Origin: Stylophora pistillata | Lineage: Eukaryota | Length of the DNA: 64,000 bases | Direction of reading: 5' to 3' | Assembly: GCF_002571385.2 (NCBI RefSeq) | Contig: NW_019217790.1 | Span: forward strand, 501,560 to 565,559 | Shown: piece by piece, positions 6,136 to 52,595 of the stretch | Layout of the letters: each line of letters begins with the position of its first letter | Position numbering within the stretch: position 1 is the stretch's first letter | Notes under the pieces: generated by a model | Told to the model about the DNA's origin: nothing | Database searches by the model: none | Seen by the model: the letters and a program-made list of their open reading frames with translations, nothing else | Translations under genes and position numbers: made by a program

Positions 6136-9100
6136 ATGGATTCATGGATTACTTGTCCCTTAATCTTCCTATTGTGGAGCCAAGACTGCTTGTGCACCAA
6201 CCAACAAAATTCTGCAACAAAATTCAAGAACTACACAGACATAGCGCTGGAGTTCTTGAAGAACTATGAAGTTCAGGCAACAAGGATTTACTCTGGCGAG
6301 AACGAAGCGGCTTGGAATTATGAAACGGACTTAAGCGAGAACAACAGGAAACTCTCCGTTTTAAACGCGACTTTCGCTAAAGCATTCAGTGTTACTGCCA
6401 GCAAAAATGCTTCTCTCATTAAAGATGTTGACTTATCAAACGATATGGCACGCCAAATTAGGATCATTCGCCGCAACGCCCTTCCTAAATCACCAACAGA
6501 CATGAAGTTAATAGACGACCTTATTTCAAATATGACTAACATTTATAGCAGTGGAAAATTATGTACGAAAAATGAATATATCAACAAAACCCGCTGCATG
6601 GAACTCGATCCAGACCTCAATGATTTAATGGCAAAGTCACGTGATTACGATGAGTTGTTATGGGGTTGGAAAAGCTGGCGAGACAAGGTTGGTCCTCCGA
6701 TGAGACCGCTGTACGAAAAACTCGTCGTCCTTCTAAATTCCGGAGCTCGTGAACATGAATGGGGAGACTACGGAAATTTCCAACGAAGCGAATATGAAAT
6801 GGGAAATGACTTCCAAGCAGCTATCAAGAAGTTATGGAATGAAGTCCGGATGTTATACCAAGAACTGCATGCTTATGTGAGGTACAAATTACGTGAGAAG
6901 TACCCTCAAGTACAAGTAAATGGGAGCATCCAGGCTCATCTTTTGGGGAACATGTGGGCCCAGGAATGGAGTTTAATCTATGACATCGTACAGCCATTTC
7001 CCAAAGTTCCATCTCTGGATGTTACACCGAACTTAATTAAGCAACAATACACCCCCAAAAAGATGTTTAAACTTGCGCAGTCGTTTTTTGTTTCCTTAGG
7101 TTTGGATCCAATGCCACAGGCGTTTTGGAATAAATCCATTATCACAAAACCTAAAGGAAAACAGATAGTCTGTCACCCTTCGGCCTGGGATTTCTGCAAA
7201 GGAGACGTTCGGTAAGGGGAAACAAAATTAATTTGTTCTTGTCATCAAGAGATAAGATCGACCTCAGGAAAATAAGCAATACCTACACATGAAAAAGAAA
7301 AGAGACAGAAAAATACGTGGGCAGATAACAGACTGACTTACGGATTGAATGTCAGATTGATCAGCTGACTGATTGACTAACTGACTTATTGACTGACTGG
7401 CTAATTGACTGACTGACTAACCGACTGACAGGCTGAATGGCTGACTAATGAATTGACTGACTCGTTCACTCAACCACTCACACACTTACTCACTGGTCAC
7501 CTGATGCACTAGCGAACTGATCACGTGCTCTCTTTCCGACCGACTGAGAGACAGCTCAAAACTGGGAATGAAAGAATGAGCAAGTAGGCAAACGAGCGCG
7601 CAAACGAGTGAATGAGTGAATGAATGAGCGAGAGAGAGAGAGTGAATGAGTGGATGAATGAGCGAGAGAGAGAGTGAATGAGTGAATGAATGAGCGAGAG
7701 AGAGAGAGAGAGTGAATGAGTGGATGAACGAGCGAGAGAGAGAGTGAGTAAGTGAATGAAAGAGCGAGAGAGAGAGTAAATGACTGGATGAATGAGCGAG
7801 AGAGAGAGAGTGAATGAGTGAATGAATGAGCGAGAGAGAGAGAGTGAATGAGTGGATGAATGAGCGAGAGAGAGAGAGAGTGAATAAGTGAATGAATGAG
7901 CGAAAGAGAGAGAGTAAATGAGTGGATGAACGAGCAAGAGAGAGTGAATGAGTGAATGAATGAGCGAGAGAGAGAGAGAGAGAGAGTGAATGAGTGGATG
8001 AGTGGATAAATGAGCGAGATAGAGTGAATGAGTGGACGAGTGGATGAATGAGCGAGAGGGAGAGAGTGAATGAGTGGATGAGTGAATGAATGAGCGAGAG
8101 AGAGAGAGTGAATAAGTGAATGAAAGAGCGAGAGAGAAAGTGAATGACTGGATGAATGAGCGAGAGAGAGAGAGAGTGAATGAGTGAATGAATGAGCGAG
8201 AGAGAGAGAGTGAATGAGTGGATGAGTGAATGAATGAGCGAGAGAGAGAGTGAATGAGTGGATGAGTGGATGCATAAATGAAAAAAATTAATGAATGAAC
8301 CACTTGATCAATCAATTAATAGGTTGACCTGATTGAATTATAAATCAACAAATCGATATTTCTTTGGTCGCAAGTGGATCGTTGCGTACGTATTTATTTA
8401 AGACGCCTAGACAAATTTTAAAATGAGCCAACGGGATATCACGAATTAAGCTTTAATGTGTGTTGCAACTACAGGATAAAGATGTGTACAGGAATGACTC
8501 AGGAACATTTGATAACAATTCACCATGAGATGGGACATTGTGAATATGACCTCGCATACAAGGACCTTCCGTACGCATACAGAAGTGGTGCCAATCCGGG
8601 ATTTCACGAGGCCATTGGGGACACAATTGCACTCTCAGTGGAAAACCCAAAGCATCTTAAGTCCGTGGGACTACTGTACACAGTTGGAAATGACTCAGGT
8701 AAGTAAGTGCTTTGAATTCTTTAGGCTAGATCTAAAAGGCGCAGAAAGGCCCGAAACATTGTTGTGTAGAAAAATAAATGCCGGGTTTGAACCCAGAGTC
8801 ATCTGCGTCGCAATGGAGATGTATTTCACCCTACGAGTCATTATTGATTTCAATTCCCATGCTTTTACCAAACTAAGCTGTTTTCCAAGAATTCACTTAC
8901 ATACGCAATAAATGGTCTCGTGAGATTTTTCAATTTATGTGAAAAAGAAAATTCCCAAGAAACTTTACATCCCTGTCGTCAATATGCTGTGCAGACCCTT
9001 AGTTAGTTTTGTCAACGTTATTGTTGCAGAAGCAGACATAAATTTTTTGATGATGCAAGCCTTACGTCGTGTAGCTCCCCTTCCTTTCACATTACTTGTG

Positions 9101-12064: not shown

Positions 12065-15000
12065 TTACAGATAAGTGCCGCTGGCATACTGGCTGCTTGC
12101 CATGGCTGGCCTGTTCCTGCGTACTCCATGTCCATTCAGATATTCGTACGGTTCGGGGTAGCCTTGTCTATGGGTTTTGTTACTTTCTTTGGTGTGTTTT
12201 CTGTTATCTTGAAATCGTTCTTCTGGCTGAGGGCTGAACCATTGGTCTTTGGTTGCGTTTCGATTGATGTCGTATTCGTAAAATACTGATTCATCTTCCT
12301 CAGGTCCTCTTGTATCAATTGCGTAGGGAATTTTCATAGGAGGGCGTTGCTCAGGTTCATATGGGTGTGACAGCCCCCTGTGTTCATAGGGTTCCGGGTA
12401 CGGTATAACTCCCCCGTTAATTTCCTCTGCGTATTCATCAGTTATTTCTTCATAGACGTCTTGATACCCGATGAGCGTACCGTCATTGTCATAGACTCCA
12501 ATTATTCTCCTTTTGTAGGAACTCTCCGGTTTCCGTGGTGGCACCTGGTACGGATCTGGATATCGTTCCATCTGACCGTCAAAGTCGTCAAGATACTCCC
12601 CACCTGGGGCACTCTGGTAAGAATAAGCCTCCCGTGGGGCCTGCAGTGGTGGTTCCTCCCAGTCGTACGGTGGGGGTTCGGTCCATCCTTTTTCACGTGC
12701 ATTTAGCTCCTCAGGATAATAACCTTTGTTATTTTCTACACCGTTTTCTGGGGGCTGATCGTATACATCATTGTACACATCAGGTGGGTCGTGATGGTGC
12801 GCATGCGCATGTAAGAGACCATCTAATTTGAACTGATCTTCTTTGCTGAATGCCCTAAATCGTCCTTCGGTCACCAACTCCTTATCTAATAGATCTTCCT
12901 CGGGAGTCTGCTCTGGTAGATTGATATTTCGGCTGGGTACCGGTTGAAAGGCTCCTCCACTGAGACGCACACCGGAAGCCTTGAGAAATGGGAACCTTTC
13001 AGAATCAACACTCTTAGGAAGCTGAGGCCTAGGTAGGGCTTGGGCGCTTACAAGAATTCTCTCTGGATCGGCAGACGGGGATGTAAAATTGAATTGTGGG
13101 GCACTTTCGACTTGTGGGGCTGAGTAAACAACAGGAGGAACATCTTCATCGTCACTTTCGTGAGAGAAACTATCCTCATCGTTATCTTCTGGTTCGGATG
13201 CAGTGAGTTCCACAGGGTGACTAACCAGAGGGTTTCCCTCTGAACCATAGTCCACAGTGACTCCAACAGGCTCTCCGATTACAACAGTTCCTGGCAACTG
13301 ACTGATGGAAATCTCAAGCTCGGAAGTACTACGCCCAAGCCCGGGGGTAACAACACGGCTGCGAACACGTTCTTGTACAAATACACCTAGCTGCACCTCA
13401 GGTTTCCCTTCAACATCAATGGTAAGTGACGTGGTTTCCGGTGTCTTTTCCGGTGCCACAACAAGACCAGCTCGGAGTTTCTCGATTTCTGTGCGACTTG
13501 CCTGATATCGCTCATACAGGACCTGAATTTCTTTAGACAGTTCAACAACATGAACACTGAGGCTCTCCTTTTCCTTCTCACATTTGTCCAGTTGGACGGT
13601 CTTCCCATCGAATTTTTCCTTCACTTCTTTAACACTGTCTTCCAGGAACCGGATGCGATTGTGTAGAACAGATTCGTCCTTCTCTGAGGCTGGTATTCTG
13701 CTTTGGAGGAGTTGAATCTCTCTCTCTAGCATGATTATCTGGTTATCTTTGTCACTGTCTTCCATCTTCTCATTCAGTTCTTTTCCTAGTTTACTAATTG
13801 TCTCTTCTCTTGTTAAGAGCTCCTTCTTGATCCATTTAGCTTGCTCTTCAGCCTGCTGTTTCTGTTTAGAGGATCGTTGGAGCTCGATTTCCAGCTGAGT
13901 GATTCTTGTATGTGATTTGTCGAAGTCCTTGCTCAACCCCTCTATCTCCATGTTGGCCTGGCTCAGCTTTATCTCCAGCTCTGCGAGTTTTTCTGAATCC
14001 TTTCGGAGATCATTTTGAAGATTATTCTTCTCCTTCTGTAAGGAATCCTTTTCATCTTCAACCTCGTCTAGTTTGAGTTTCAGAGATTCAAACTTTTCCT
14101 GCCAACCCTCTTCACTCGTCTGACGAAACAAAGATCGCCTCAGCTCTTCAAGCTCAGCTAGATGTTTTTTGCGTTCTTCTTCTTTCTTTCTTAGCGTTTC
14201 CTTGAGTTTCCCGAGTTCCTTTTCCAGGTCTCCTGTGTCCTTGGTGAGCTTTAGTTCCGAAAGTTGTCGGCGCAACATGGCAGTCTCGCCTTGGGCATCG
14301 GTGAGTTCACGTCGAACCTTGTTATACTTGGTCTTAGTTTGCTCGTGTTCATCATCGTTTCTTTCCAAGTTTCGTTCCAGTCGTTGCTTCTCGATTTGAA
14401 GGGAATTCTTCTCTCGCTTTAACTCATCAAACTTTTCCTTCCAGTTCTCATCACTGTCTTTTCTCCTCAACTTGGCTTTCAAATCCAATATTTCGCCCTC
14501 CAATCGACGGATCTTGTCTTCTACTTCCTTGTTCTTGCTTGTCAGTTTTTCTTTCTCAGTGATGTGCAAATCCTCTTCCTCTTTCAGTTCATCGCCAAGA
14601 TATTTAATTTCTTCCTTTAGTTTGTCGACTTGTTTCCCTAGATCATCGTTGTCTTTCTTCAGGTCATCGTTTTCATCACACAGGGTGTTGTACATCTCTT
14701 TTCCTTTATCGAATTTGACTTTCATTTCTTCCAGCTCCTCTTCAACGTCTGCTTTCTTTTCACAAAGATCTTCCTTCTCGTCTTTCAATTTCTTTATATC
14801 ATCCATCAGCTTTTGGTATTGCTCTTTTAATTTCTCATATTCTTCGCTTAATTCTTCGTCAGTGTCCTGTGATTTTAGCTCGAAGAGTTCCTTCCTTGCT
14901 TTTTCTAGCTCCGCCTCAAGGTATTCTTGCTCTCTTAGTTTTTCCTCCAGGTCACTGATGGTGTTTTTATCCTGAGAAAGATCTTTTCGTTGCTCATTTA

Positions 15001-16852
15001 TCAGGACTTCTTTCTCTATGAGCTCCTTTCTCATCTCTTCACACCGATCGGTTAGCTGCGTGATGGTCTTAGACAGCTCCTCCGTGGTCTTCTTAGCTCT
15101 TTCTTCAGACTCTTCCAAGCATTCTTCAACTTTTTCTTTCTCTTTCTTGGTGCGCTCCAGAAGCTCTTCGAGTTCTTGTATCTGCGATTTGGAGTAGTCT
15201 TGACTGGACCATGAATCTCCAGATTCCTTTGGAACAACAGCAAGGTTAGGAGTTTCTCCAACCGCAACTATATGCTCTTCAAAGTCATCGAAATCACTCA
15301 AATCATCCTCATTAGGTGCCAGTGGAACTCTCTGGACAACTTGAAGGTGCTCCACCACAATTTCATCTGAATCTTCGTCCTTAGGTTTTTCTTCCTCTAT
15401 GTATCTCTCAGCCAGTTCGCTCTGTAAAGAAATCACCTCATCTCTTAGTTGCTCCAGTTCTTGTGTAATCTCTTCGTTTTCCTCTCTTAATTTACTTAGT
15501 TCGTCGTCATCATTTCCGTCCGGCTTGTCGAGGTCCTCCGCAAACCTCGACAGGTCGCGATCTTGAAGGTCTTCTAGTTGCTTCTGTAGTAAAGCAATAT
15601 CATCTCTCAACTCTTCGTTCTCAGCCTTCAGTGCCAGAATCGTCTTTTCCTTATCAGAGACCTCTTTCCGGAATAGCTCAGCGCGGACATGGGTTTCGTT
15701 AAGTTGCTTGGTGCATTGCTTGGAGTCCATTTCGGCTTTGTTCTTACTATCCACGAACTGTAGGTAGAGGAGTTCCTTTTCTTTGCAGACTTCTTTAAGA
15801 TTCATCTCCAGCTGTGTTATCTTCTTGTTTTGAATCTCGAGCCTGTTGGTGCCTTCGCGGAACAAACTTTCACGGCTATCTTTCTCTGCCTCTAAACTAC
15901 TTTCCAACTCGGCGACAAGGCCTCGCAGTAAGGACATTTCTTTCTCAAGCTCGATATTCCTCGTTCGGCTGTTGTCGCAGTTTTCTTCTGACTGCTGAAT
16001 CTGCACGTGATACTCCACAATCTGTTGTTTCATCTCCTCAATAATGTCGTCATCGGCCGACAACTTAATTTGCAAGTCCTTCAATCGCCGTTCAAGATCA
16101 TCCACTTCGACTCGCAATTCTTCTTTTTCTTTCAGCAGATGATCATTTTCCGTTTCGATGTCTTCGTATTTGAGCTTTAAAGACTCCATTTCCAGCAGGA
16201 TATTGTCACCCCGACCACAGTATTTACATATTTTGTCGTCGCCGTTGCTGTCACGCAAATCGTTTACCTCCACTTGCAATTTTTCGAGCTGCCTTACCAA
16301 ATCATCGTTTTCTTTTCTCCTCTCATCAAGCTGATCTTTGAGATTTTCGTTATCCTTTTCAATTTCGTCGGCTTTCTCCTGTTCTTCTTTATAGCCACGA
16401 ATTGTCGCCTCGAGCTTTTCAATGTTGATTTTTAAATGATTATTTTCCTCCACAACCGTTTTGATCGTTACTTCATGCTCTGAGAAAGTCCTGTGATAAG
16501 AATACGCTGCGTTTTTCAATACGCCGATCTTCTCCTCGGTATTTTCACAGGCGTTCTCGAGGTTGCGTAGTTTCTCGCGAGTATTTCTTAACTCCTGTTC
16601 AAGCTCTCCTAGCCTGTCTTGTGCTTCGAAGAATCGTGTTTTGAAATCTTCATCGGCCGGAAACTCCTCGACTGTAACCCTAATCGTTTCTTCTGTAGTC
16701 GTAGCATTAGATGTCTTGGAAACATAATCTGTTTTCTCTCTTCTTATTTCGCTATCGTAAGTGCCTTTGACAGGATCATGTGAGATTTCACGATCATTCG
16801 TTGGAGCAATCGACCCTTGGTTCGATGAATGGGCTTCCTTTGAGTCTGACAT
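12065..16852 (-). CDS. Intronless 1595-aa long coiled-coil protein with Pro/Tyr-rich disordered C-terminus (function unknown)
   Basis: Uninterrupted 4.8-kb ORF. E/K/L heptad-rich from ~aa 70-1130, one CxxC (CKYC), PPPY and YPEPY motifs in the tail. Confidence 0.85.
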   Translation of the reverse strand: MSDSKEAHSSNQGSIAPTNDREISHDPVKGTYDSEIRREKTDYVSKTSNATTTEETIRVTVEEFPADEDFKTRFFEAQDRLGELEQELRNTREKLRNLENACENTEEKIGVLKNAAYSYHRTFSEHEVTIKTVVEENNHLKINIEKLEATIRGYKEEQEKADEIEKDNENLKDQLDERRKENDDLVRQLEKLQVEVNDLRDSNGDDKICKYCGRGDNILLEMESLKLKYEDIETENDHLLKEKEELRVEVDDLERRLKDLQIKLSADDDIIEEMKQQIVEYHVQIQQSEENCDNSRTRNIELEKEMSLLRGLVAELESSLEAEKDSRESLFREGTNRLEIQNKKITQLEMNLKEVCKEKELLYLQFVDSKNKAEMDSKQCTKQLNETHVRAELFRKEVSDKEKTILALKAENEELRDDIALLQKQLEDLQDRDLSRFAEDLDKPDGNDDDELSKLREENEEITQELEQLRDEVISLQSELAERYIEEEKPKDEDSDEIVVEHLQVVQRVPLAPNEDDLSDFDDFEEHIVAVGETPNLAVVPKESGDSWSSQDYSKSQIQELEELLERTKKEKEKVEECLEESEERAKKTTEELSKTITQLTDRCEEMRKELIEKEVLINEQRKDLSQDKNTISDLEEKLREQEYLEAELEKARKELFELKSQDTDEELSEEYEKLKEQYQKLMDDIKKLKDEKEDLCEKKADVEEELEEMKVKFDKGKEMYNTLCDENDDLKKDNDDLGKQVDKLKEEIKYLGDELKEEEDLHITEKEKLTSKNKEVEDKIRRLEGEILDLKAKLRRKDSDENWKEKFDELKREKNSLQIEKQRLERNLERNDDEHEQTKTKYNKVRRELTDAQGETAMLRRQLSELKLTKDTGDLEKELGKLKETLRKKEEERKKHLAELEELRRSLFRQTSEEGWQEKFESLKLKLDEVEDEKDSLQKEKNNLQNDLRKDSEKLAELEIKLSQANMEIEGLSKDFDKSHTRITQLEIELQRSSKQKQQAEEQAKWIKKELLTREETISKLGKELNEKMEDSDKDNQIIMLEREIQLLQSRIPASEKDESVLHNRIRFLEDSVKEVKEKFDGKTVQLDKCEKEKESLSVHVVELSKEIQVLYERYQASRTEIEKLRAGLVVAPEKTPETTSLTIDVEGKPEVQLGVFVQERVRSRVVTPGLGRSTSELEISISQLPGTVVIGEPVGVTVDYGSEGNPLVSHPVELTASEPEDNDEDSFSHESDDEDVPPVVYSAPQVESAPQFNFTSPSADPERILVSAQALPRPQLPKSVDSERFPFLKASGVRLSGGAFQPVPSRNINLPEQTPEEDLLDKELVTEGRFRAFSKEDQFKLDGLLHAHAHHHDPPDVYNDVYDQPPENGVENNKGYYPEELNAREKGWTEPPPYDWEEPPLQAPREAYSYQSAPGGEYLDDFDGQMERYPDPYQVPPRKPESSYKRRIIGVYDNDGTLIGYQDVYEEITDEYAEEINGGVIPYPEPYEHRGLSHPYEPEQRPPMKIPYAIDTRGPEEDESVFYEYDINRNATKDQWFSPQPEERFQDNRKHTKESNKTHRQGYPEPYEYLNGHGVRRNRPAMASSQYASGTYL

Positions 16853-42400: not shown

Positions 42401-44935
42401 ATGGATTTTGAAAGAAGAGCTATATCATCTAGATCACCTGCCACGAGGTATGAAGTCCTTCTTGTTGAAGATACCCCAAAGAAAGGACTTACCGAAGAAC
42501 GAATGACAACTTGTTTTCATGTCTATGATGAACTAATTCCAGAGTTGGGAGTTTATAAAAAAGTTTTAAAGATGCTTCGGGATGAACTATACGAAGCTGT
42601 GTATAGCAATGAATACACTACAGCAATACCTAAAAAAGGGAAAAGCAAGACGACTTATATTCAACGCATTCCCTATTTCGTTCTTGTTAATCGAGTTTAC
42701 GAGGAACGCGACATAAACGCAGACCAGCTAAAAGAAAATATTGCTGCATTGGAAAACAAACTTGCTGAGAAAGACAAACTATTGGAAGAGGCTAATGAAA
42801 GCATCGAGCGACTTAAAAAGTCACTTAAAGAGTGCAGGGATAAGATTTACAACATGGAAATCGAAATGGAAAACCAGAATCTCGAACAAAGGAAACTTGA
42901 AGCAAGCGTCCAATATGAACAGATGACGCAACAAGCGGCTAAAGACCGCTACGAGAAACGCATTTCTGGTCTTAAAGAAGAGCTCGCTCAAGCTAAAGAA
43001 AGGAACAAATTTCTTGAAAAGTTTAAAGAAGGTTATGACACCCTTGAAGAAGCATTTAATGATTCAACAGTGTTCGAAAATAAGCCTCAAAACCCAGCTG
43101 TTCTAACGAGAAGAGCTCAACTCATTCAAGAAATTTCTAATGCTAAACTTTTGGAAGAGCAACTTCTAACCATGCAGAATTTAGTTATTGAGGAATTTGA
43201 GCTTTTCCTGGAGGAGAATAAGGCTTTGCCGACGACAGAAGAAGTTGATTTAGGAAGCAGTGGAAGTAACTTTCGTGGAACACCAGACGATGAACATGAA
43301 ATGAGAGTAAAACTGGAAGAGGAGCTGCACAAAGTCAAGGAGAGATTCAAACAAAGCATTGCTGATATTGAAAATGAATTTCAGCTCATTGAGATTCAAA
43401 GGTCCAGTCTTGAAGATCAGTTGGTCGAACTTGAGGAGGAAGCTAGAAGAATAGAAAGAGAAACCAACGAAAAGAAGGAGAGAAAGAAGAGCATGTTTTT
43501 CATGGAAGGAGAAAAGGAAAAGAAACCAGATCCACCTGAAGACGATGACGAGATTGACTTTGTGAAGATCATGAACAGTGCACATAATCAAGATCCATTT
43601 ATTTCACACGAAAGAATCCTCAGCAAGTATTCAGCAATGATGTACTACTCCTGCAACCAGGGAAAGAACTATCACGTGTTTAAAGATGCAAAGTTTTGTG
43701 CAAGTTGTGGTGAAACAACTCTACTCTGCCCACACAAAATTACAGATCACAAGGTTGTTTCATTGCCTCATAACTGTACCCACGTCAAGATCATTAGGCC
43801 AACAGTGCACATATCACGCGATGAAAAACCTCCTGTTCTTGTGACTGAAACCCCCGAAAGCGTCCGAGCGATATCGGTGATTTCAAACAGCACTTTAGCT
43901 TATGGAGAAGAGTCCATCTTGAAAGAACAGCAACACCTGACCACGACGTACAAGTTCCTCTGGGATGACTACTACTCAAGGACATCAATCCGAAGACAGA
44001 TACCACGGGCTCTTTCTCAGGATCGTGTCTCATCCATCATTGAACAGTTTTACTCTTCACTAATCTGGCAGGATGATTACGCAGTAGAAGATGAACAAAT
44101 TGTTTCAGTTCTGGACACGTTGTACTCTTTCTTCCACGAACGATATCTTGTTTCAGATGTCACATTTCTTGCTGTGTATGATTTCTTTACAAGTGTGATC
44201 AAGTTTGCTCCAAACAACAAGAATATTCAGTTGTTTGCACAAGCAATGTGTGGCAGTTTAGATCCAGTTGTGGTTCGTTACATCCTTCTGGTAAATGAGT
44301 TTATCGATCTGGTTGAGTGGGTGGCCGTCAAAGACATCAGAATTTTTGCTCAAGTTGTATATCCCTTTATGAATGAAGAAGACATTGAGCAGTTCTCTAT
44401 GGGCTACACCTCCTTCAGCGAAAACAAGATTTCCAAGGAACTAGTGTCGGAGTATTTCTTGTACATAATTCTGAAGTACAGAGAACCTCGCTTTCAAGAA
44501 ATGGAAGTGAAACTTCTGCAACAACCAGGGAGGAGGCCTGGGTTCATGACAGATATTGAATATGCAGAAGCTATCGATAACATCTGTCCCTTGGCATCCG
44601 AACGCATGCGGCGGCGTCTGTTTGTAGAGTCTGTGGAACACTTGAGAGCCACTGACGACTCAGTGTCCGTGATGCGCTTGGCACAAATCACTGGTTATCT
44701 GACTATATTGCAACTCACACCCGTCATTAAGAATTCAGTTTCCCAGAAAGTGGATGAAGCACGTCTTGGGGTCGCCGAAAGACAGTCGTCCCCACCCCCT
44801 GATGCTCCGGTGAGCAGTGCATCCAAACCTGGGAATTTTTTTACCACGACCAGTGCACGTGCAGTAGCAGCTGAGAATGCCAAACGCTCAAGAACTCGGC
44901 AACTAAAAAGGATTGAAGAATACCAGTATGACTAA
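42401..44935 (+). CDS. Intronless 844-aa protein with coiled coils and a CxxC-x6-CxH motif; weak TSNAXIP1-family resemblance
   Basis: Uninterrupted ORF. EERMTTCFHVYDELIPELGVYKKVLKMLRDE and YSFFHERY...AVYDFFTSVIKF...IQLFAQAMCG recall the N-terminal and central blocks of TSNAXIP1 (by eye). Contains FCASCGETTLLCPH. Confidence 0.7.
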   Translation: MDFERRAISSRSPATRYEVLLVEDTPKKGLTEERMTTCFHVYDELIPELGVYKKVLKMLRDELYEAVYSNEYTTAIPKKGKSKTTYIQRIPYFVLVNRVYEERDINADQLKENIAALENKLAEKDKLLEEANESIERLKKSLKECRDKIYNMEIEMENQNLEQRKLEASVQYEQMTQQAAKDRYEKRISGLKEELAQAKERNKFLEKFKEGYDTLEEAFNDSTVFENKPQNPAVLTRRAQLIQEISNAKLLEEQLLTMQNLVIEEFELFLEENKALPTTEEVDLGSSGSNFRGTPDDEHEMRVKLEEELHKVKERFKQSIADIENEFQLIEIQRSSLEDQLVELEEEARRIERETNEKKERKKSMFFMEGEKEKKPDPPEDDDEIDFVKIMNSAHNQDPFISHERILSKYSAMMYYSCNQGKNYHVFKDAKFCASCGETTLLCPHKITDHKVVSLPHNCTHVKIIRPTVHISRDEKPPVLVTETPESVRAISVISNSTLAYGEESILKEQQHLTTTYKFLWDDYYSRTSIRRQIPRALSQDRVSSIIEQFYSSLIWQDDYAVEDEQIVSVLDTLYSFFHERYLVSDVTFLAVYDFFTSVIKFAPNNKNIQLFAQAMCGSLDPVVVRYILLVNEFIDLVEWVAVKDIRIFAQVVYPFMNEEDIEQFSMGYTSFSENKISKELVSEYFLYIILKYREPRFQEMEVKLLQQPGRRPGFMTDIEYAEAIDNICPLASERMRRRLFVESVEHLRATDDSVSVMRLAQITGYLTILQLTPVIKNSVSQKVDEARLGVAERQSSPPPDAPVSSASKPGNFFTTTSARAVAAENAKRSRTRQLKRIEEYQYD

Positions 44936-46350: not shown

Positions 46351-48165
46351 CTACCAGCACACTTCGTCATCACTGTCAAAGTAATCAGTTAGCTCACGCT
46401 CCAACCGTCCTCTTTTCCATTGTGATTCTCTGTTGATCTGTACATCCTCCTTGTGCTTTATCTCCTTACAAACTCTGCATCTTTGCTCTCTCCTCTTCAG
46501 TTGTGTTTTGCTGAATTCTTCTTGCGGAAACAGTCCTTCACATGCCGTGCAACTGAGTAGTTTCGTAAGGGAAATAAAGTGTTCTTTTATCTGGAATGAT
46601 ATGGAGTGGAAGCAGGGCATTCGTCTCGTATATACCGAAAGATCTTTTGGATATGTAGCGAAACGGATCAGCGTACCTCTCAGATGCAACCCGGAGAGAC
46701 GAGCTTTTTCTCCACCGTTGACATATTTCATCTTCTCGTGCAATTTAAACATGCCCACCGTATCCACGATACGGTATTATTGAATCAAATCATCCAGCAG
46801 AGGTCTTTTCTTCCATGATTCATGATTCAACGGCTCCGCAACTTCCTCAATGTAACATAAATCAGAAACCTTCATTGGGTTTTTGCCTATAATTTCAGTG
46901 AAATCTGTATCCTGAACGTACAGCTCAAGGCAGTGACTATAGCCATATATGCTCTCCACTTCACGTGTTCTCTGGCTACAGTACTTTGTTTCAGGGAGTC
47001 GACACGAAAACAGTGGGGAGTAGAGTTAAGCGGTTTGTTTTCAGGACGATAGATGACCTCAAGAAGCTGAAAATACAATACTTCTGTCAATCTTACTTTA
47101 AAATGGCGCCAGAGCGCGTCAGAATCTGGATGGCAATCAAACATCAATTTCGTGTGAGACTCGTCACTTCAAGGATCGGAGCAAGTCCAGCACTAAACAC
47201 AGCTTTTCCTAATTTGAGGACATCAAATATGTAGGCTTTATCCTTAGTTGCGACTGTTATGATCGGATCGAGTGGGTAAAACATATTCGTCTTTTCGGCA
47301 TTACTTTCGACGACATGCTTTCCTGGGTATACAATCTCACAGATGTAAGAAAGAACTTTGTCAGCAAACTTAACCTCTTGAGAAGGCCGGAGTTCGTTTT
47401 TGAGCCGAAACGTCCTATTGGACTTGTACTTTAAGATGATATTGCCATCTGTTTTATATGGACTGGTCGTTTGGGACGGCTGTCCAAATATAGACCTACA
47501 ATCTTTGGAAATACTTCAACGAAGGGCAGCCAGAATAATATATAACTTACCTCGCGATAAACCCACTGAAGTATACCGACACTCGAATTGGAACGCTAAC
47601 CTTTTATTATGAACTTCGATTGATTAAACTATTTCATAGTGTGTTTATAGGTGAAGCACCTGCTGCTCTTTCATACTTGACAAATAAACCTTGCACTACG
47701 TACAACTTCGGAAGGACTAATAACATAATCGTCCCGCATTTTAACTCGCAGTTTCTTAAAAATTCTATTAGCTATAGAGGCGCTATCCTTTGGAACGCTG
47801 GCTGGTCTTATTTTACAGGCCAGTTCACTGATTTTTATAGTAAAGTGAAGAAGGACTTCTATTTTAAGGAACTTGATTTTAGCGCACAGTCGGTCTAGTC
47901 GTTGTCCAGGCACTACCGAGTTTCATCTAGTAATTATTTTCCCACGACCCCACCAGCTTTGAGCTTTAAACCCTATCGTGTTTAAATGAAGGATATGAAT
48001 GAATGATTGCGAGTATTCGCTTCCTGCCCAGATTAACACCTTCACAATCAACAGCTAAGAGGCGAAAATTATGTTCGATTTCTCGTCTGAGCTCAGGAAT
48101 AGCATCCTCTAGACCAGCTTCATTGTCGATGAGTCTGAAATCACTTGACTGATCTTGTACGCCAT
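46351..48165 (-). pseudogene. EXD1-like exonuclease/Stc1-finger pseudogene (copy A), frameshifted and LINE-interrupted
   Basis: ATG at 48165, MAYKI.., frameshift, ..LLAVDCEGVNLGRKRILAII | insertion | ITVATKDKAYIFDVLKLG, frameshift, KLMFDCHPDSDALW..., ESIYGYSHCLELYV, WKKRPLLDDLIQ*, CTACEGLFPQEEFSKTQLKRREQRCRVC. Confidence 0.9.
47264..48002 (+). mobile_element. 5'-truncated L2/Crack-type LINE 3' end inserted in exonuclease copy A
   Basis: LYFKMILPSVLYGLVVW...LEILQRRAARII and KNSISYRGAILWN are typical post-RT LINE motifs. (TGAA)n tail. ATGAT occurs on both sides (47259-47263, 48003-48007). Confidence 0.85.
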
Positions 48166-48589
48166 TCTTGATATTACTTGAATTTTTGCTCTGGTTTGAT
48201 GAAAGTCCGTCTTGCGCAAGGACAATGCGACAGCTTTCTTGGAACCTCTTGAGTTACGAGTTCTAAGAAAATCATTTTTATTTCCGCCAATTGTGTCCCC
48301 CTCCCTCCTCCTCTCCTCTCCTGATGGCTATTAACACAGATTGCTTCTGAGTACCAGAGGATTAGAAGCAATCCTCCCATCGGCTCGTTTGAATTTTTGG
48401 TACAAACGAATTTCTCTCGGTATCTGTTGGAAGACGTATGGTTAAACAAACAAAGGATCAAAAAGTCAACCTCTTGATTTTTTGTCATTTGTCTCTTCTT
48501 CAAACCGTTGTGAACGTGTTCTACCTGATTACCCCACCCCCCATCAAAGATGTATATGGCAAAACGCAGGGGGGATGTAACAAAACAAG

Positions 48590-48693
48590 ATAATTTGGAT
48601 ATATCAACAAAGTTGAAATGGTAAATTGGCAACCGTAACGATTACAAAGCTGACGTTTCGTGCGTTAGCCCTTCGTCAGAGCGAACAAAACCA
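48590..48693 (-). mobile_element. Solo Penelope-type terminus with minimal type I hammerhead core (48649-48682)
   Basis: Minus strand reads GCT-CTGACGA-A-GGGC-TAAC-GCAC-GAAA-C-GTC-AGC. 12-bp direct repeat TAACAAAACAAG at 48578-48589 and 48694-48705. Confidence 0.65.
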
Positions 48694-48833
48694 TAACAAA
48701 ACAAGGCCGACCAATGAAAGAAAAAGGTGGAGTTCAAAGAAATGATTAATTCTAAGGAGCACTTCACACTCGGCAGTTTTGACGAGTAAGCTTCGTCAGT
48801 TTTTCATCCTTTACTTTTGTTAAATCATAAGGA

Positions 48834-49814
48834 ATGGCCAGCAAGTTCTCATATGATTACACACTGGTTGATAACGATTCTAGTCTCAAAGACGCCATAT
48901 CCGAACTCAGACAGAAAATAGTACATAGCGCACTCTTAGCGGTTGATTGCGAAGGTGTTGACCTCAGCAGAAAAGGAAGACTTACCATAATAACAGTTGC
49001 CATTGAAAAGAAAGTCTATATATTTGATGTTTTGGAACTGGGAAAACGCGCCATAGTCCGAAGTGGACTTCGTGAAATCCTGGACAACAAGTCGTGTACT
49101 AAGCTAATGTTTGATTGTCGGCAAGATTCAGATGCGCTCTGGCATCAGTTAAATGTCAGGCTAACGGGAGTGTTGGATCTTCAGTTGCTTGAAATCCTTT
49201 ACCGCCGTGAAAATGACTCATCTAACAGTCGTGAACTGTCCCGCACTAAACATAAAACGGCTCGAAGCCAGAGAACAGATGAAGTTGAAAGCATTTATGG
49301 TTTTCGTCGCTGCCTCGAACTGTATCTTGAGGATGAAGATTTGGTTAAGATGAAGGATGAAGGAAGTAAATTGTTAAAGATGGACATTGAAGTGTGGGAG
49401 AAAAGGCCTTTACCTGATGAGTTAATACAGTACTGCGTCGTAGATACAATGGCGATGTTCAAATTGCACGAGAAGATGAAAGATGTAGAAGAAAGGGAGA
49501 GGGCTCGTTTACAAGTTGCCTCCGAGAAGTATGTTGATCTGTATCGAAGCAAAACACAAAGATCGTTCAACAACTTTGAAACCAACGCATTGCTTCCCCT
49601 AGACATCATCCCGGACGAAGGAACTCTTTCTTTTCCGCCTGCTGATACTAAATGTACTCGTTGCAAAAGATTATTTCCACGAGAAGAATTCACCAAAACA
49701 CAGCTAAAGAATAACGAGCAGAAGTGCAGGGTATGCAAGGAAATAAAACGCCGAGAAGATGTACGAAAAAACAGAGAAGCGAACAGCCGAGATGACTTTC
49801 TTTATGTTGTGTAG
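48834..49814 (+). CDS. EXD1/Egalitarian-like DEDDy 3'-5' exonuclease with C-terminal Stc1-like C4 zinc finger (copy B, 326 aa, intronless)
   Basis: ExoI AVDCEG, ExoII FDCRQDSDAL, DLQL, W.KRPL, ExoIII YCVVD. Finger: CTRCKRLFPREEFTKTQLKNNEQKCRVC. Confidence 0.88.
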   Translation: MASKFSYDYTLVDNDSSLKDAISELRQKIVHSALLAVDCEGVDLSRKGRLTIITVAIEKKVYIFDVLELGKRAIVRSGLREILDNKSCTKLMFDCRQDSDALWHQLNVRLTGVLDLQLLEILYRRENDSSNSRELSRTKHKTARSQRTDEVESIYGFRRCLELYLEDEDLVKMKDEGSKLLKMDIEVWEKRPLPDELIQYCVVDTMAMFKLHEKMKDVEERERARLQVASEKYVDLYRSKTQRSFNNFETNALLPLDIIPDEGTLSFPPADTKCTRCKRLFPREEFTKTQLKNNEQKCRVCKEIKRREDVRKNREANSRDDFLYVV

Positions 49815-50359
49815 TTATATTATTGTTATATCCAGGTTCTTGTACATCCCAGTGAAAAGGTAGGTTAAGTTTATAATCATATTAATTATTATAAGGAAGA
49901 ACTGACTTTAACTATAATTAACACTTAAATGATAATATTGAACGACAGAATCGAATAATAGAAGTTATCTTTTAAAATGAATGTTCTCATCGGTAGCATT
50001 TTTTAAAACCGCTTTTCACAAGAAGTCGATCAAGGGCTTGCTTAAAGACACGAGCTCGATATGTTTTGTAGTTCTTTTCTAAAGAAAAGAAGAATTGATT
50101 ACGCTCTTAGCTAGGAAAGCGTCCGTAGAATTGTGGTTTTTATATGAGATCGCACATTTCCGAATGTACGCGAATAATTTCTATAAATGTTAGCGTGCGT
50201 CTTTTAGTTACATGAATCAGAATCTCTATAAATCGTAATGACTGCCTCTGAAGGCAGGTGACTTGCGTGCGTAGTCCAAATATTTAGAAAATACTTTATA
50301 GTCCTGTATATAGCTCGGAAAAATTCGATTTATGTTGTATATGATATATACGTTTAGTA

Positions 50360-51064
50360 TATATCATATATATACTAAACGTAAGAAATATAAATAGTAT
50401 TGGGTAATGCATTCCAGACCTAAACAGTAGGATTTAATAATGAGTAGAAGGCAAGAATGTGCAAGGGGCGAAATAACCACGATTGGTTGCGAAGAACTCA
50501 ATTACATTGTGTAGATGATGCCCTAATTACGTATTATAGCGGATGCGATTTTTTGATCTGAATTCGCGTCTTTTGTTAAGTCCGTGGGGACTAAGTGTAC
50601 TCAGTTGTGCGGTCCAGTAGGCCTCTCTCGTAAGTAATAATCTATCAATATAAGCTGCGTCCCCTTGGCTGGTAATTTTCTCAATAACAATAAAATTAAT
50701 TTCAGAAATTTCGTGTTTGGTACAATTGAAGTGGACTGCAAGCTCGCACGTTTTTTTGTTTGTTCGCATAGATGACTTGTGATTACGAAAACGCACCTTG
50801 AATTCAGTGGAAGTAGAACCATAGTAAACAATATTAAACCAAGTAAACCAAGTAAACAATAGTAAACCAAGTAAACAATATTTCTGGAAGAGCAAGACAA
50901 GTTTTGGCAAATCTTATAGGTTCGGCCTGTGGAAAAACTCTTAAATTTGGAATCTTGAATTAAAAAATTCTTGCAAAGGTCGCATCTAGAAGAGCATTTA
51001 AAACACCCTCCCGTTTCCTTCTTTGCCTGACTAACTTTCCCACCCACACAAAATCTAGAAGGCG

Positions 51065-51110
<46 letters not shown>
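50360..51110 (-). mobile_element. Penelope-like element (Neptune-type) 3' remnant: Cys-rich linker plus GIY-YIG endonuclease, in (TA)n
   Basis: CFKCSSRCDLC linker, LSCSSRNIVYL, YYGST...KVRFRNHKS, LAVHFN, REAYW...LSTLSPHGLN. Frame disrupted by short duplications at ~50830-50880. (TA)n tracts at 51068-51110 and ~50340-50375. Confidence 0.85.
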
Positions 51111-51112
<2 letters not shown>

Positions 51113-51410
51113 AAGTCTGTAAGTCGATTTTCGCGTGGAACAGTGCTCAATACGTTGAAGCAGAGCAGAATAAATATTACGAGAGGAAAAAAGGACGTAA
51201 CTACAAATTTGGAAAGAAAATGAACAATGTTCGCCGGAACTGAAAAGCAGGAAGCGGAAGTTCAAACTGATGAATTCTTGGAACCCGTTTACTCGACGAA
51301 GTGGTTCCAAGAAAGCTTGGGGTTCGCTCTAAACAAATAAATAAGGATGGCTCGAAGAGGGTAGGCAAGCAACATTTTTGCGTAAGTGGAAATTGTAAAC
51401 GACAAGCGTG

Positions 51411-52595
51411 ATGAAAAATAACTACAAGGTTGTCGATGAACAGAGAACATTGAAGGATGCTATCTCTAATCTCAAACGGAAAACAAAACATGATAGCTCA
51501 CGGTTTATAGCTGTTGATTGTGAAGGAGTTTCTTTAAGTAGACATGGAGCTCTAACAATCATAACAGTCGCAACTGAGGAAGAAGTCTACATATTTGATG
51601 TCTACAAATTGGGAAAGTTTATATTCAGTTGTGGACTCAGTCAAATCCTCGAAGACAAGTCATGCACGAAGCTGATGTTTGATTGCCGAGAAGATTCAGA
51701 TGCTCTCTGGCATCAGTTTAACGTAAGAATGACAGGCATTTTGGATCTTCAACTCCTTGAAATTCTCTACCGTCGTGAAAACGACACAGTTGCTGACAAA
51801 GCTACCGACCAGTTCTCCTTTAGTACGAGCTACTCTCATCGTAATCAAAGAACCCATGATCAAGTGGAGAGCGTTTTCGGTTTTCGTCGCTGCCTTGAGC
51901 TGTACGTCAGTGATGAAAATTTAATAAGGATGAAGGATAAAGGAAGACTTTTGTTGAAGAGTGACGAAGAAATTTGGAAGAAGAGACCTTTGTCAAACGA
52001 GTTAATACAATATTGTATTGTTGATACATTGGCAATGTTCAGCTTGTACGACAAGTTGAAGGGTGTCTTACAAGCTGCCGATCAGATTCGCCTACGAATA
52101 GCATCCGAGAGATACGCTGATATGATTCGATGTAAAACCAAAAGGTATTTTGACGAATACGAGAAGAATGCACTCCTTCCTCTTTACATCATACCTGATA
52201 AAAGACGTGTCTATTTTCCTCGAGCTGATACAGCTTGCACCTGCTGTCATAGGTTGTTTCCCAGAGACGAGTTCTGGAGGTCGGAACTTAGACGAAGGGG
52301 GCAAAAATGCAGGGTGTGTAAGGAGGTTGCCCGTCGAGTAAGTGTACGGATTAACAGACACAATAGTTGGGCACGGAATTGGAGACATAGGGGCACAGAA
52401 CAGTATGTCACAGAATCCTTAAAATTTGATCCTACGAAAAGGAAGACTCCTTGTGATTTTGACGCCAAGGAAAGGACAAATCCCAGAGATTTAGATCCCA
52501 GGAAAGAAAACCCTTGGGAATCCTGGCGTTGGATTGTGTTCATGCTAGTAACTGTTATAGCAACATTGTTACTGGTGGCAGTTTTTCTAGTCTGA
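51411..52595 (+). CDS. EXD1-like DEDDy exonuclease, Stc1-like finger and C-terminal transmembrane tail (copy C, 394 aa, intronless)
   Basis: AVDCEG, FDCREDSDAL, YCIVD; CTCCHRLFPRDEFWRSELRRRGQKCRVC; ends WRWIVFMLVTVIATLLLVAVFLV*. Confidence 0.88.
   Translation: MKNNYKVVDEQRTLKDAISNLKRKTKHDSSRFIAVDCEGVSLSRHGALTIITVATEEEVYIFDVYKLGKFIFSCGLSQILEDKSCTKLMFDCREDSDALWHQFNVRMTGILDLQLLEILYRRENDTVADKATDQFSFSTSYSHRNQRTHDQVESVFGFRRCLELYVSDENLIRMKDKGRLLLKSDEEIWKKRPLSNELIQYCIVDTLAMFSLYDKLKGVLQAADQIRLRIASERYADMIRCKTKRYFDEYEKNALLPLYIIPDKRRVYFPRADTACTCCHRLFPRDEFWRSELRRRGQKCRVCKEVARRVSVRINRHNSWARNWRHRGTEQYVTESLKFDPTKRKTPCDFDAKERTNPRDLDPRKENPWESWRWIVFMLVTVIATLLLVAVFLV

What the first reader, a model, noticed from the sequence alone, without database searches (positions are those of the whole stretch)
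46351..52595. Cluster of catalytically intact EXD1-like exonucleases fused to an Stc1-like zinc finger: candidate small-RNA/transposon-defence module
Seen: three diverged intronless paralogs in 6 kb (A pseudogene on -, B and C on +). Each has the EXD1/Egalitarian-type DEDDy domain followed by C-x2-C-x3-FP-x2-EF-x3-(Q/E)L-x6-C-x2-C (49653-49736 in B). B and C keep all catalytic residues (D-x-E, D, Y-x3-D). Established: mouse/silkworm EXD1 is a piRNA-pathway factor regarded as nuclease-dead, with an Lsm domain that is absent here. The CxxC...FS..QL...CxxC pattern is that of the Stc1 domain, and fission-yeast Stc1 links Argonaute to the CLRC methyltransferase complex. Inference: an active 3'-5' nuclease with a possible Argonaute/PIWI- or RNA-binding finger, evolving by birth-and-death amid transposons, i.e. 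a possibly undescribed cnidarian small-RNA trimming or antiviral family.
Basis: partly seen in the sequence, partly recalled or inferred. Interest (0 to 1): 0.85.

Follow-up and report, generated by a model that had tools for sequence, protein, structure and literature searches.

The report
Coral exonuclease gene cluster with zinc finger
A stony-coral genome carries a small, conserved, transcribed cluster of intronless genes for a probably active RNA-trimming-type exonuclease joined to a zinc finger; the family is uncharacterised, occurs well beyond corals, and nothing yet ties it to small-RNA defence.

Summary
B (48834-49814, +) and C (51411-52595, +) are intact single-exon genes. A (46354-48166, -) is a dead copy, broken by frameshifts, a stop and a 739-bp dispersed repeat.

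- **Domain:** all three encode a DEDDy 3'-5' exonuclease domain (Pfam PF01612, E about 1e-18). Its nearest solved relatives are T. brucei RNase D (TbRND), EXD1 and Egalitarian.
- **Catalytic residues:** all five are kept, in B and C and in 119 of 120 close homologs.
- **Finger:** one C4 unit follows the domain. Stc1 is its best Pfam and Foldseek match, but below threshold, and it is half of the two-finger Stc1 domain. A profile search ranks the sirtuin-3 zinc module higher.
- **Expression and selection:** poly(A) RNA contigs cover B and C colinearly. dN/dS against orthologs is 0.20-0.26.
- **Age and synteny:** the array sits between the same neighbours in three coral genomes. The paralogs are old (dS above 2).
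- **Separate EXD1:** a multi-exon gene with lost catalytic residues lies elsewhere in the genome, so this family is not coral EXD1.
- **Range:** the exonuclease-plus-finger architecture also occurs in a bivalve, a nemertean, a basidiomycete and a stramenopile alga.

Most likely these are active RNA 3'-end exonucleases whose finger helps bind substrate, as in TbRND. A small-RNA or Argonaute role is untested.

The parts
48834..49814 (+). Paralog B: intact single-exon gene of 326 aa. Exonuclease domain at aa 9-217 (48858-49484). Short, variable C-terminal tail.
   Evidence: ORF. PF01612 E 1.1e-17. An RNA contig covers 48828-50319 colinearly. dN/dS 0.196 against its ortholog in L029. A poly-A-run length allele at 49765 changes only the last residues.
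49653..49736 (+). C4 zinc finger of B (CxxC, 20 residues, CxxC, with an invariant F-P..E-F), followed by a long basic helix.
   Evidence: The four Cys are invariant in 119 of 120 close homologs. Stc1 scores 19.1 bits, below the cut-off. The AF2 model of the finger has pLDDT 84. The top Foldseek hit is 2LUY.
51411..52595 (+). Paralog C: intact single-exon gene of 394 aa from the ATG (the open frame starts at GTG 51408). Exonuclease domain at about 51423-52070; finger at 52236-52319.
   Evidence: ORF. PF01612 E 1.2e-18. RNA contigs in four poly(A) runs run from 51235-51348 to beyond 53000 without joints. dN/dS 0.255.
52524..52592 (+). Hydrophobic C-terminal tail of C, a predicted tail anchor.
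   Evidence: Kyte-Doolittle 18-residue mean of 3.05 at the extreme C-terminus. Only 1 of 283 other family proteins (P0119) has such a tail. P0119 is the syntenic C ortholog, 74% identical, and its tail is conserved.
46354..48166 (-). Paralog A: a pseudogene in four collinear pieces, with frameshifts, an in-frame TAA before the Y-x3-D motif, and substitutions at family-invariant positions. Its finger is at 46468-46551.
   Evidence: The orthologs are intact in two related genomes, at 349 aa in L029 and 362 aa in L039.
47264..48002 (+). Dispersed-repeat insertion that splits A. It looks like the 3' end of a LINE; that reading is an inference from its ORF motifs.
   Evidence: At least 50 copies at 75-87% identity in the genome. 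No Pfam hit for its ORFs.
48584..48686 (.). High-copy short interspersed repeat of about 100 bp, 150 bp upstream of the B start codon.
   Evidence: 1007 first-look candidates in the genome, with the scored copies 93-97% identical. Summed RNA contig depth is about 1e5.
50530..50910 (-). GIY-YIG nuclease-domain remnant between B and C, probably a transposon fragment.
   Evidence: PF01541 E 7e-5, 23.5 bits against a cut-off of 22.6.

Best explanation
B and C, and the almost intact D elsewhere in the genome, encode a catalytically competent DEDDy 3'-5' exonuclease of the TbRND/EXD1/Egalitarian branch. It most likely acts on RNA 3' ends by the usual two-metal mechanism.

The C-terminal C4 zinc finger and the basic helix after it probably act as an accessory substrate-binding module. 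The zinc-finger domain of T. brucei RNase D plays that role, raising RNA binding and cleavage.

The paralogs share the catalytic core and finger but differ in their tails, which suggests different locations or partners. B has a short tail, C has a membrane tail anchor, and D and most coral homologs have an acidic, tryptophan-rich tail.

What is shown: domain identity, residue conservation, transcription, purifying selection and conserved synteny. What is inferred: enzymatic activity, RNA as the substrate, and the finger's role. The pathway is unknown.
For: - **Domain.** PF01612 scores well over its cut-off. The nearest solved sequences are TbRND (9e-15), Bombyx EXD1 (1e-13) and Egalitarian (2e-13), against 0.04 or worse for EXD2, RRP6 and WRN. 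Foldseek gives the same ranking.
- **Active site.** B's D98, Y200 and D204 align with TbRND D145, Y226 and D230, and both carry the D-x-E motif; D80A, E82A or D230A mutations abolish or nearly abolish TbRND activity.
- **Conservation.** All five catalytic residues are kept in 119 of 120 close homologs and in 98 of 117 divergent representatives that cover those columns. The four Cys are kept in 119 of 120.
- **Finger precedent.** The TbRND zinc-finger domain is needed for RNA binding and efficient cleavage (PMC7797062).
- **Expression.** Poly(A) RNA contigs cover B and C colinearly, with gaps in the intergenic DNA.
- **Selection.** dN/dS is 0.20 and 0.26 at dS 0.27.
- **Synteny.** The array is conserved in three coral genomes.
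Against: - No biochemical data exist for any family member.
- Its relatives EXD1 and Egalitarian act as RNA binders, not nucleases.
- Sequence cannot decide between RNA and DNA substrates.
- The full-length AF2 model is mediocre (pLDDT 67.8), and no information was obtained on how the finger sits relative to the active site.
- The finger is a C4 unit, not the CCHC knuckles of TbRND, so the analogy concerns architecture, not homology.
- RNA evidence comes from assembled contigs, which cannot exclude DNA carry-over or give expression levels.
Confidence: 0.6

Rival explanations
1. The family is a small-RNA pathway factor: an active trimmer or processor recruited to Argonaute or PIWI proteins through the Stc1-like finger, or through the Trp-rich acidic tail, and it serves transposon or virus defence.
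For: - Stc1 is the best Pfam family and the top phmmer and Foldseek PDB hit for the finger.
- The Stc1 LIM-like fingers are needed for Ago1 association (PMC2875855).
- EXD1, a relative of the nuclease domain, is a piRNA factor (PMC4712191).
- Most coral homologs carry three or four Trp residues in an acidic tail, including a W-G pair. From general knowledge, that pattern recalls Ago-hook motifs.
- C is tail-anchored. From general knowledge, so is the unrelated piRNA trimmer PNLDC1.
Against: - Every Stc1 match is below threshold and covers one of the two fingers.
- The finger profile matches the sirtuin-3 zinc module better than Stc1.
- VIA-align gives only weak, unrelated matches, best Z 3.5.
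- By my reading of the 2LUY numbering, one of the two Stc1 residues whose mutation disrupts the Ago1 association (K100) aligns with an invariant Phe here.
- The Lsm domain that links EXD1 to TDRD12 is absent.
- The genome has a separate canonical EXD1-like gene.
- No expression, interaction or small-RNA data were obtained.
Confidence: 0.15
2. The proteins are DNA 3'-5' exonucleases for repair, or for degrading foreign or retro-element DNA, like the WRN exonuclease domain or EXD2, with the finger binding DNA.
For: PF01612 covers both DNA and RNA exonucleases. WRN, EXD2 and apicoplast DNA polymerase exonuclease domains appear among the weaker sequence and fold matches.
Against: The nearest relatives by a wide margin are RNA-acting or RNA-binding proteins: TbRND, EXD1 and Egalitarian.
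Confidence: 0.12
3. Despite intact catalytic residues, the proteins act mainly as non-catalytic RNA-binding adaptors, like EXD1 and Egalitarian.
For: Both animal relatives with known function work as RNA binders (the titles of the Egalitarian-BicD-RNA structures).
Against: Near-perfect conservation of all five catalytic residues across 120 homologs and most distant representatives is hard to explain without catalysis. EXD1, and the coral EXD1-like gene on contig C112, have lost these residues.
Confidence: 0.1
4. The genes are passengers of a transposon or an integrated virus, not host genes.
For: They are intronless and tandem, and transposon fragments lie next to them.
Against: - No terminal repeats flank the genes. 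The only repeats in 45.5-54 kb are the coding regions themselves, plus two short, chance-like matches.
- The same neighbours (an 843-aa gene upstream, TAF9 and Med4 downstream) occur in three genomes.
- Purifying selection acts on them.
- No relative was found in viral contigs.
Confidence: 0.03

Closest known systems
Trypanosoma brucei RNase D (TbRND; PDB 7C42-7C4C)
   Same: It is the best sequence and fold match in the PDB. It has a DEDDy exonuclease core with all catalytic residues and the shared F-D-C-R-x-D ExoII motif. A zinc-finger module follows the core after a linker. Some distant family representatives (P0180, P0209) carry both the C4 finger and a CCHC knuckle.
   Different: TbRND has four CCHC knuckles, not one C4 finger. 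It is mitochondrial and trims U-tails of guide RNAs. Identity is only about 20%, and no targeting signal or U-preference can be inferred here.
EXD1 (mouse and Bombyx piRNA factor; PDB 5FIQ)
   Same: The exonuclease domains belong to the same branch (E 1e-13 to 1e-21). NCBI names the coral proteins 'piRNA biogenesis protein EXD1-like'.
   Different: EXD1 has an N-terminal Lsm domain that binds TDRD12, lacks the DEDD residues, is nuclease-dead, and has no zinc finger. The coral genome has a separate multi-exon gene of that type on contig C112.
Egalitarian (Drosophila mRNA-localisation adaptor)
   Same: The exonuclease-like domain belongs to the same branch (E 2e-13 to 5e-22).
   Different: Egalitarian is a protein of about 1000 aa with BicD- and dynein-light-chain-binding regions and acts as an RNA-binding adaptor. 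It has none of the finger or tail features seen here.
Stc1 (S. pombe; Pfam PF12898, PDB 2LUY)
   Same: It shares a CxxC...CxxC unit of the same spacing, with an aromatic-Ser/Thr-x-x-Gln core. It is the best Pfam family and the top phmmer and Foldseek PDB hit for the finger. A relative with six tandem units passes the Pfam cut-off.
   Different: Stc1 has two such fingers forming a LIM-like tandem domain, plus a disordered CLRC-binding tail, and no nuclease. The matches here are below threshold, and the sirtuin-3 zinc module scores higher with the finger profile.

Membership tests
DEDDy 3'-5' exonuclease (Pfam PF01612, DNA_pol_A_exo1) | Profile match above the curated cut-off | tested here: met
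   B scores 64.8 bits and C 67.9 bits against a cut-off of 23.6. All 22 aligned homologs match.
DEDDy 3'-5' exonuclease (Pfam PF01612, DNA_pol_A_exo1) | ExoI D-x-E, ExoII D and ExoIII Y-x3-D residues present | tested here: met
   B has D38, E40, D98, Y200 and D204. D98, Y200 and D204 align with TbRND D145, Y226 and D230, and the D-x-E motifs correspond, four residues out of register in the ungapped alignment. All five are intact in 119 of 120 close homologs.
DEDDy 3'-5' exonuclease (Pfam PF01612, DNA_pol_A_exo1) | Metal-dependent exonuclease activity | not testable with these tools
   This needs a recombinant-protein assay.
EXD1 (PET-complex piRNA factor) | N-terminal Lsm domain that binds TDRD12 | tested here: not met
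   The exonuclease domain starts at residue 9 in B and residue 6 in C. Homologs start at the same point. RNA contigs show no joint to an upstream exon.
EXD1 (PET-complex piRNA factor) | Loss of the DEDD catalytic residues (inactive nuclease) | tested here: not met
   The residues are retained here. They are lost in EXD1 and in the coral EXD1-like gene on C112, where the ExoI Asp is Cys and the ExoII Asp is Ala.
EXD1 (PET-complex piRNA factor) | C-terminal helical hook that mediates homodimerisation | not tested
   Helices follow the core in the model, but no dimer prediction was run.
Stc1 domain (Pfam PF12898) | Profile match above the curated cut-off (24.8 bits) | tested here: not met
   B scores 19.1 bits, A 23.3 bits, and C has no hit. 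Nine of 22 homologs hit at E below 0.01, the best at 1.4e-4. Only the six-finger relative P0128 passes, at 51.2 bits.
Stc1 domain (Pfam PF12898) | Tandem two-finger (eight-Cys) LIM-like domain | tested here: not met
   There is a single four-Cys unit, which matches only profile positions 42-83 of 84. No further Cys pairs lie upstream.
Stc1 domain (Pfam PF12898) | Structural similarity of the finger unit to solved Stc1 | tested here: inconclusive
   2LUY is the top Foldseek hit, but at E 0.4 (probability 0.80, rmsd 2.5 A over 41 columns). By phmmer it scores E 0.13. The sirtuin-3 zinc module scores better with the finger profile. The best VIA-align matches are ZAD domains at Z 3.5.
Stc1 domain (Pfam PF12898) | Binds Argonaute | not testable with these tools
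TbRND-type RNase D with a zinc-finger domain | RNase D-type core followed by CCHC zinc knuckles | tested here: not met
   The core is the closest PDB match. The finger is a single C4 unit, and no zf-CCHC hit occurs in B or C.

The most novel reading that the evidence does not exclude
The family would be the catalytically active, ancestral-type counterpart of EXD1. It would be kept in corals alongside the dead canonical EXD1, and in scattered animals, fungi and algae. It would work as a small-RNA 3'-end trimmer or decay enzyme, docked onto Argonaute or PIWI proteins through its Stc1-type finger or its Trp-rich acidic tail. One paralog (C) would be anchored to an organelle membrane, as piRNA trimmers are.
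Probability: 0.12. Interest if true: 0.8.

Novelty: new variant of a known kind. Interest (0 to 1): 0.45.

Why it matters
EXD1 and Egalitarian are the only studied animal members of this nuclease branch, and both are non-catalytic. This family would show that animals also keep a catalytically intact version, built like the trypanosome guide-RNA trimmer with a nuclease core followed by a zinc finger.

It is present in corals, molluscs, nemerteans, fungi and algae. I did not look for it in the usual model organisms, and I found no paper on it.

Database names such as 'piRNA biogenesis protein EXD1-like' are misleading and already colour coral transcriptome papers (PMC6385260). The family is small and intronless, and its members differ mainly in their tails, which makes it an easy target for biochemical work.

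Tried and rejected
- **Viral origin.** A scan of viral contigs with the family profile gave no relative.
- **Transposon-borne gene.** Rejected: no flanking terminal repeats and conserved synteny.
- **Other proteins with the finger.** A search with the six-finger region of P0128 returned only P0128 itself. The protein-atlas search with the finger alone gave no usable hit.
- **RNA families.** An Rfam scan of 45.5-53.8 kb gave only chance-level hits.
- **Fold of the finger.** VIA-align over 48,161 chains gave no match above Z 3.5.
- **Stc1 elsewhere in the genome.** A search of the whole genome found only this family's fingers, below the cut-off.
- **Literature.** Searches for 'EXD1-like', 'Stc1 domain' with 'exonuclease', and 'EXD1' with 'coral' found no study of this family.
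- **Not run.** I ran no Argonaute or PIWI complex prediction. I do not claim binding, and the coral AGO and PIWI genes are spliced, so a joined model would have been needed.
Full report
**What is in the sequence**

The region holds two intact single-exon genes and one dead copy of the same family.
- B is 48834-49814 (+), 326 aa.
- C is an open frame at 51408-52595 (+), with its likely ATG at 51411, giving 394 aa. B and C are 61% identical.
- A lies on the minus strand in four collinear pieces between 46354 and about 48166. Reading that strand shows an early frameshift, further frame changes, and an in-frame TAA just before the Y-x3-D motif. It also shows changes at family-invariant positions and a 739-bp insertion at 47264-48002.
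- The insertion is a dispersed repeat with at least 50 copies at 75-87% identity in this genome.
- A whole-genome search (398 Mb) finds only one more locus, D, at G000:C6:1751621-1752673. D is intact except for one in-frame TAG at a conserved Tyr codon. Whether that TAG is real, allelic or an assembly error could not be checked.

**The nuclease domain**

B and C match Pfam PF01612 (3'-5' exonuclease) at E about 1e-17 to 1e-18, far above the cut-off.

Among solved structures, the closest sequences are T. brucei RNase D (TbRND, 9e-15), Bombyx EXD1 (1e-13) and Drosophila Egalitarian (2e-13). EXD2, RRP6 and WRN score 0.04 or worse. A family profile gives the same grouping. Foldseek with a moderate AF2 model (pLDDT 67.8) again ranks TbRND, Egalitarian and EXD1 first.

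The printed alignment, read with the residue numbers in the TbRND paper, aligns B's D98, Y200 and D204 with TbRND D145, Y226 and D230. The B D-x-E motif (D38, E40) corresponds to TbRND D80-x-E82, although the ungapped alignment places the two motifs four residues apart. D80A or E82A abolishes TbRND activity, and D230A nearly does.

In an alignment of 269 retrieved proteins, all five catalytic residues are intact in 119 of 120 close homologs. They are also intact in 98 of the 117 divergent representatives that cover those columns.

**Not the coral EXD1**

EXD1 is defined by an N-terminal Lsm domain that binds TDRD12, by loss of the DEDD residues, and by lack of nuclease activity (PMC4712191). 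None of this applies here:
- The Pfam match starts at residue 9 in B and residue 6 in C.
- Homologs start at the same place.
- RNA contigs show no upstream exon.

The genome also has a separate multi-exon gene on contig C112, at about 80.0-86.6 kb.
- Its exons match family-profile positions 31-119 in order.
- Its ExoI motif has Cys in place of Asp, and its ExoII motif has Ala in place of the catalytic Asp.
- Its ExoII exon has EXD1 as its best PDB hit, at E 4.5e-6.

That gene is the likely canonical EXD1. The NCBI name 'piRNA biogenesis protein EXD1-like', given to coral members of the present family, is therefore a similarity label and not an orthology statement.

**The finger**

In B it lies at 49653-49736, in C at 52236-52319, and in A at 46468-46551. 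Its four Cys, the F-P and the E-F are invariant among coral homologs.

Evidence for an Stc1 relationship:
- Stc1 (PF12898) is the best Pfam family for it. B scores 19.1 bits and A 23.3 bits against a cut-off of 24.8, C has no hit, and 9 of 22 homologs hit at E below 0.01.
- The match covers only profile positions 42-83 of 84, which is one of Stc1's two fingers.
- With the finger alone, the top PDB sequence hit is S. pombe Stc1 (2LUY, E 0.13), and both Stc1 fingers align to it.
- An AF2 model of the finger region (pLDDT 84) has 2LUY as its top Foldseek hit. The scores are E 0.4, probability 0.80 and rmsd 2.5 A over 41 columns; the next hit has probability 0.07.
- A distant family member, P0128, has six tandem copies of the unit after its nuclease domain and passes the Stc1 cut-off at 51 bits.

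Evidence against a specific relationship:
- A profile of the coral fingers matches the zinc module of sirtuin-3 better (E 3e-4) than Stc1 (E 0.08).
- An exhaustive structural comparison gives only weak hits, the best being ZAD domains at Z 3.5.

My reading is that the unit is of the Stc1 repeat type at the level of motif and fold, but it is one generic C4 finger, not the tandem LIM-like domain. No Argonaute binding can be inferred from it.

In Stc1, the K100A and R116A mutations disrupt the association with Ago1 (PMC2875855). By my reading of the 2LUY numbering, K100 aligns with the invariant Phe here and R116 with a conserved Lys. This mapping is my inference and is unverified.

**Expression and selection**

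Contigs from four poly(A) RNA-seq runs in two studies lie colinearly on the genes.
- For B, one contig covers 48828-50319.
- For C, contigs run from 51235-51348 to beyond 53000.
- No joints are seen, and parts of the intergenic DNA are uncovered.

These are assembled contigs, so they show presence and lack of splicing. They do not show expression levels, and DNA carry-over cannot be excluded.

One allele in two runs adds an A to a poly-A run at 49765 and changes only the last few residues of B.

Against orthologs in a related coral (locus L029), dN/dS is 0.196 for B and 0.255 for C, at dS about 0.27. The neighbouring 844-aa gene gives 0.105. Between paralogs, dS exceeds 2 in most pairs and is saturated.

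**Synteny and family history**

The same array lies between the same neighbours in two other coral assemblies.
- L029 has an 843-aa gene, then A (intact, 349 aa, minus strand), B, C, then TAF9 and Med4.
- L039 has the same order, with an extra copy between B and C.

The C ortholog in L039 (P0119) is 74% identical and keeps the hydrophobic C-terminal tail. Among 283 family proteins, only P0119 has such a tail, apart from window C itself.

In a tree of 40 sequences, A, B and C types group together with moderate support (88/81) and come only from these three related genomes. D falls in a well-supported clade with Orbicella, Oculina, Desmophyllum, Acropora and Montipora proteins.

So D represents the pan-scleractinian gene, and the window cluster is an older lineage-specific expansion with occasional loss. 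'Birth and death' applies, but slowly, and the genes are host genes. No terminal repeats flank them, and no viral relative was found.

Transposon debris lies nearby:
- the repeat inside A;
- a repeat of about 100 bp, with about 1000 candidate copies, 150 bp upstream of B;
- a GIY-YIG remnant between B and C.

**Range of the family**

A profile search of 1.84 billion representative proteins found 4062 hits at E up to 1e-3 and 134 at E up to 1e-30. Of the best 149 new representatives, 77 carry a CxxC...CxxC unit, nearly all of them after the nuclease domain.

Named examples with the finger are:
- Mya arenaria (a bivalve);
- Lineus longissimus (a nemertean);
- Chrysophaeum taylorii (a stramenopile alga);
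- Guyanagaster necrorhizus (a basidiomycete);
- a protist transcriptome.

The protein atlas also points to basidiomycete and echinoderm clusters. Two representatives combine the C4 finger with a CCHC knuckle, the type found in TbRND. The architecture is therefore old and patchy in eukaryotes, not a cnidarian invention. I found no paper on it.

**Most likely mechanism**

The best precedent is TbRND. It has a DEDDy core using two-metal catalysis, and a C-terminal zinc-finger domain that grips the RNA a few nucleotides upstream of the 3' end. That domain is required for strong binding and efficient cleavage (PMC7797062).

I propose the same division of labour here:
- The core removes 3' nucleotides.
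- The basic C4 finger and its following helix hold the substrate.
- The variable tails set location or partners. B has a short tail. C has a tail anchor. D and most coral homologs have an acidic tail with three or four Trp residues.

Activity, RNA as the substrate and the finger's role are inferences.

The small-RNA or Argonaute reading remains possible, through the Stc1-type unit, the Trp-rich tail and the membrane anchoring of C. It has no direct support.

**Verdict**

It is only weakly supported on Stc1, wrong on taxonomic restriction, and untested on function.

This is an uncharacterised variant of a known kind of enzyme, and its interest is moderate.

Noticed in passing
window 48584-48686: A short interspersed repeat of about 100 bp. 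It has about 1000 first-look candidates in the genome, with scored copies 93-97% identical. Summed depth in poly(A) RNA contigs is about 1e5. It lies 150 bp upstream of the B start codon.
   Followed up: partly
G000:C6:1751621-1752673 (L002 1480-2610): The fourth family copy, D, is the pan-scleractinian type. It is intact throughout, including the finger and Trp-rich tail, except for one in-frame TAG at a conserved Tyr codon. This could be a recent nonsense allele or an assembly error.
   Followed up: partly
G000:C112, about 80.0-86.6 kb (L041 2065-8632, +): A multi-exon gene with an EXD1-type exonuclease-like domain that has lost the ExoI and ExoII Asp residues. It is the probable canonical EXD1 ortholog of this coral.
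   Followed up: partly
Tails of coral homologs (for example P0007, P0016, P0038; L002 2476-2580): Most family members end in a conserved acidic tail with three or four Trp residues, often with Trp as the last residue. B has lost this tail, and C has replaced its end with a hydrophobic anchor. It could be a protein-binding motif.
   Followed up: partly
window 42401-44935 (+): An intronless 844-aa ORF with no Pfam match. It is conserved in the syntenic position in two other corals. In L029 it is 93% identical in protein, with dN/dS 0.105. It is a conserved gene of unknown function.
   Followed up: partly
P0128 (ENA metagenome contig of 2540 bp): A 701-aa relative with the nuclease domain followed by six tandem copies of the finger unit. 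It is the only family member seen that passes the Pfam Stc1 cut-off.
   Followed up: partly
window 49765: A poly-A-run length polymorphism (an extra A) in RNA contigs of two runs shifts the last residues of B. An in-frame 3-nt deletion at 49258 is present in all four runs.
   Followed up: partly
G000 contigs C4829, C3020, C2418: Contigs of at most a few kb give the highest PF01612 scores in the assembly (E 1e-30 to 1e-41). They may come from bacteria or symbionts rather than the coral.
   Followed up: no
window 6130-7215 (+) and 12065-16852 (-): The first is an ORF for an angiotensin-converting-enzyme-like peptidase M2 (E 2e-99). The second is a 1595-aa ORF with only weak, sub-threshold matches to coiled-coil families.
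   Followed up: no
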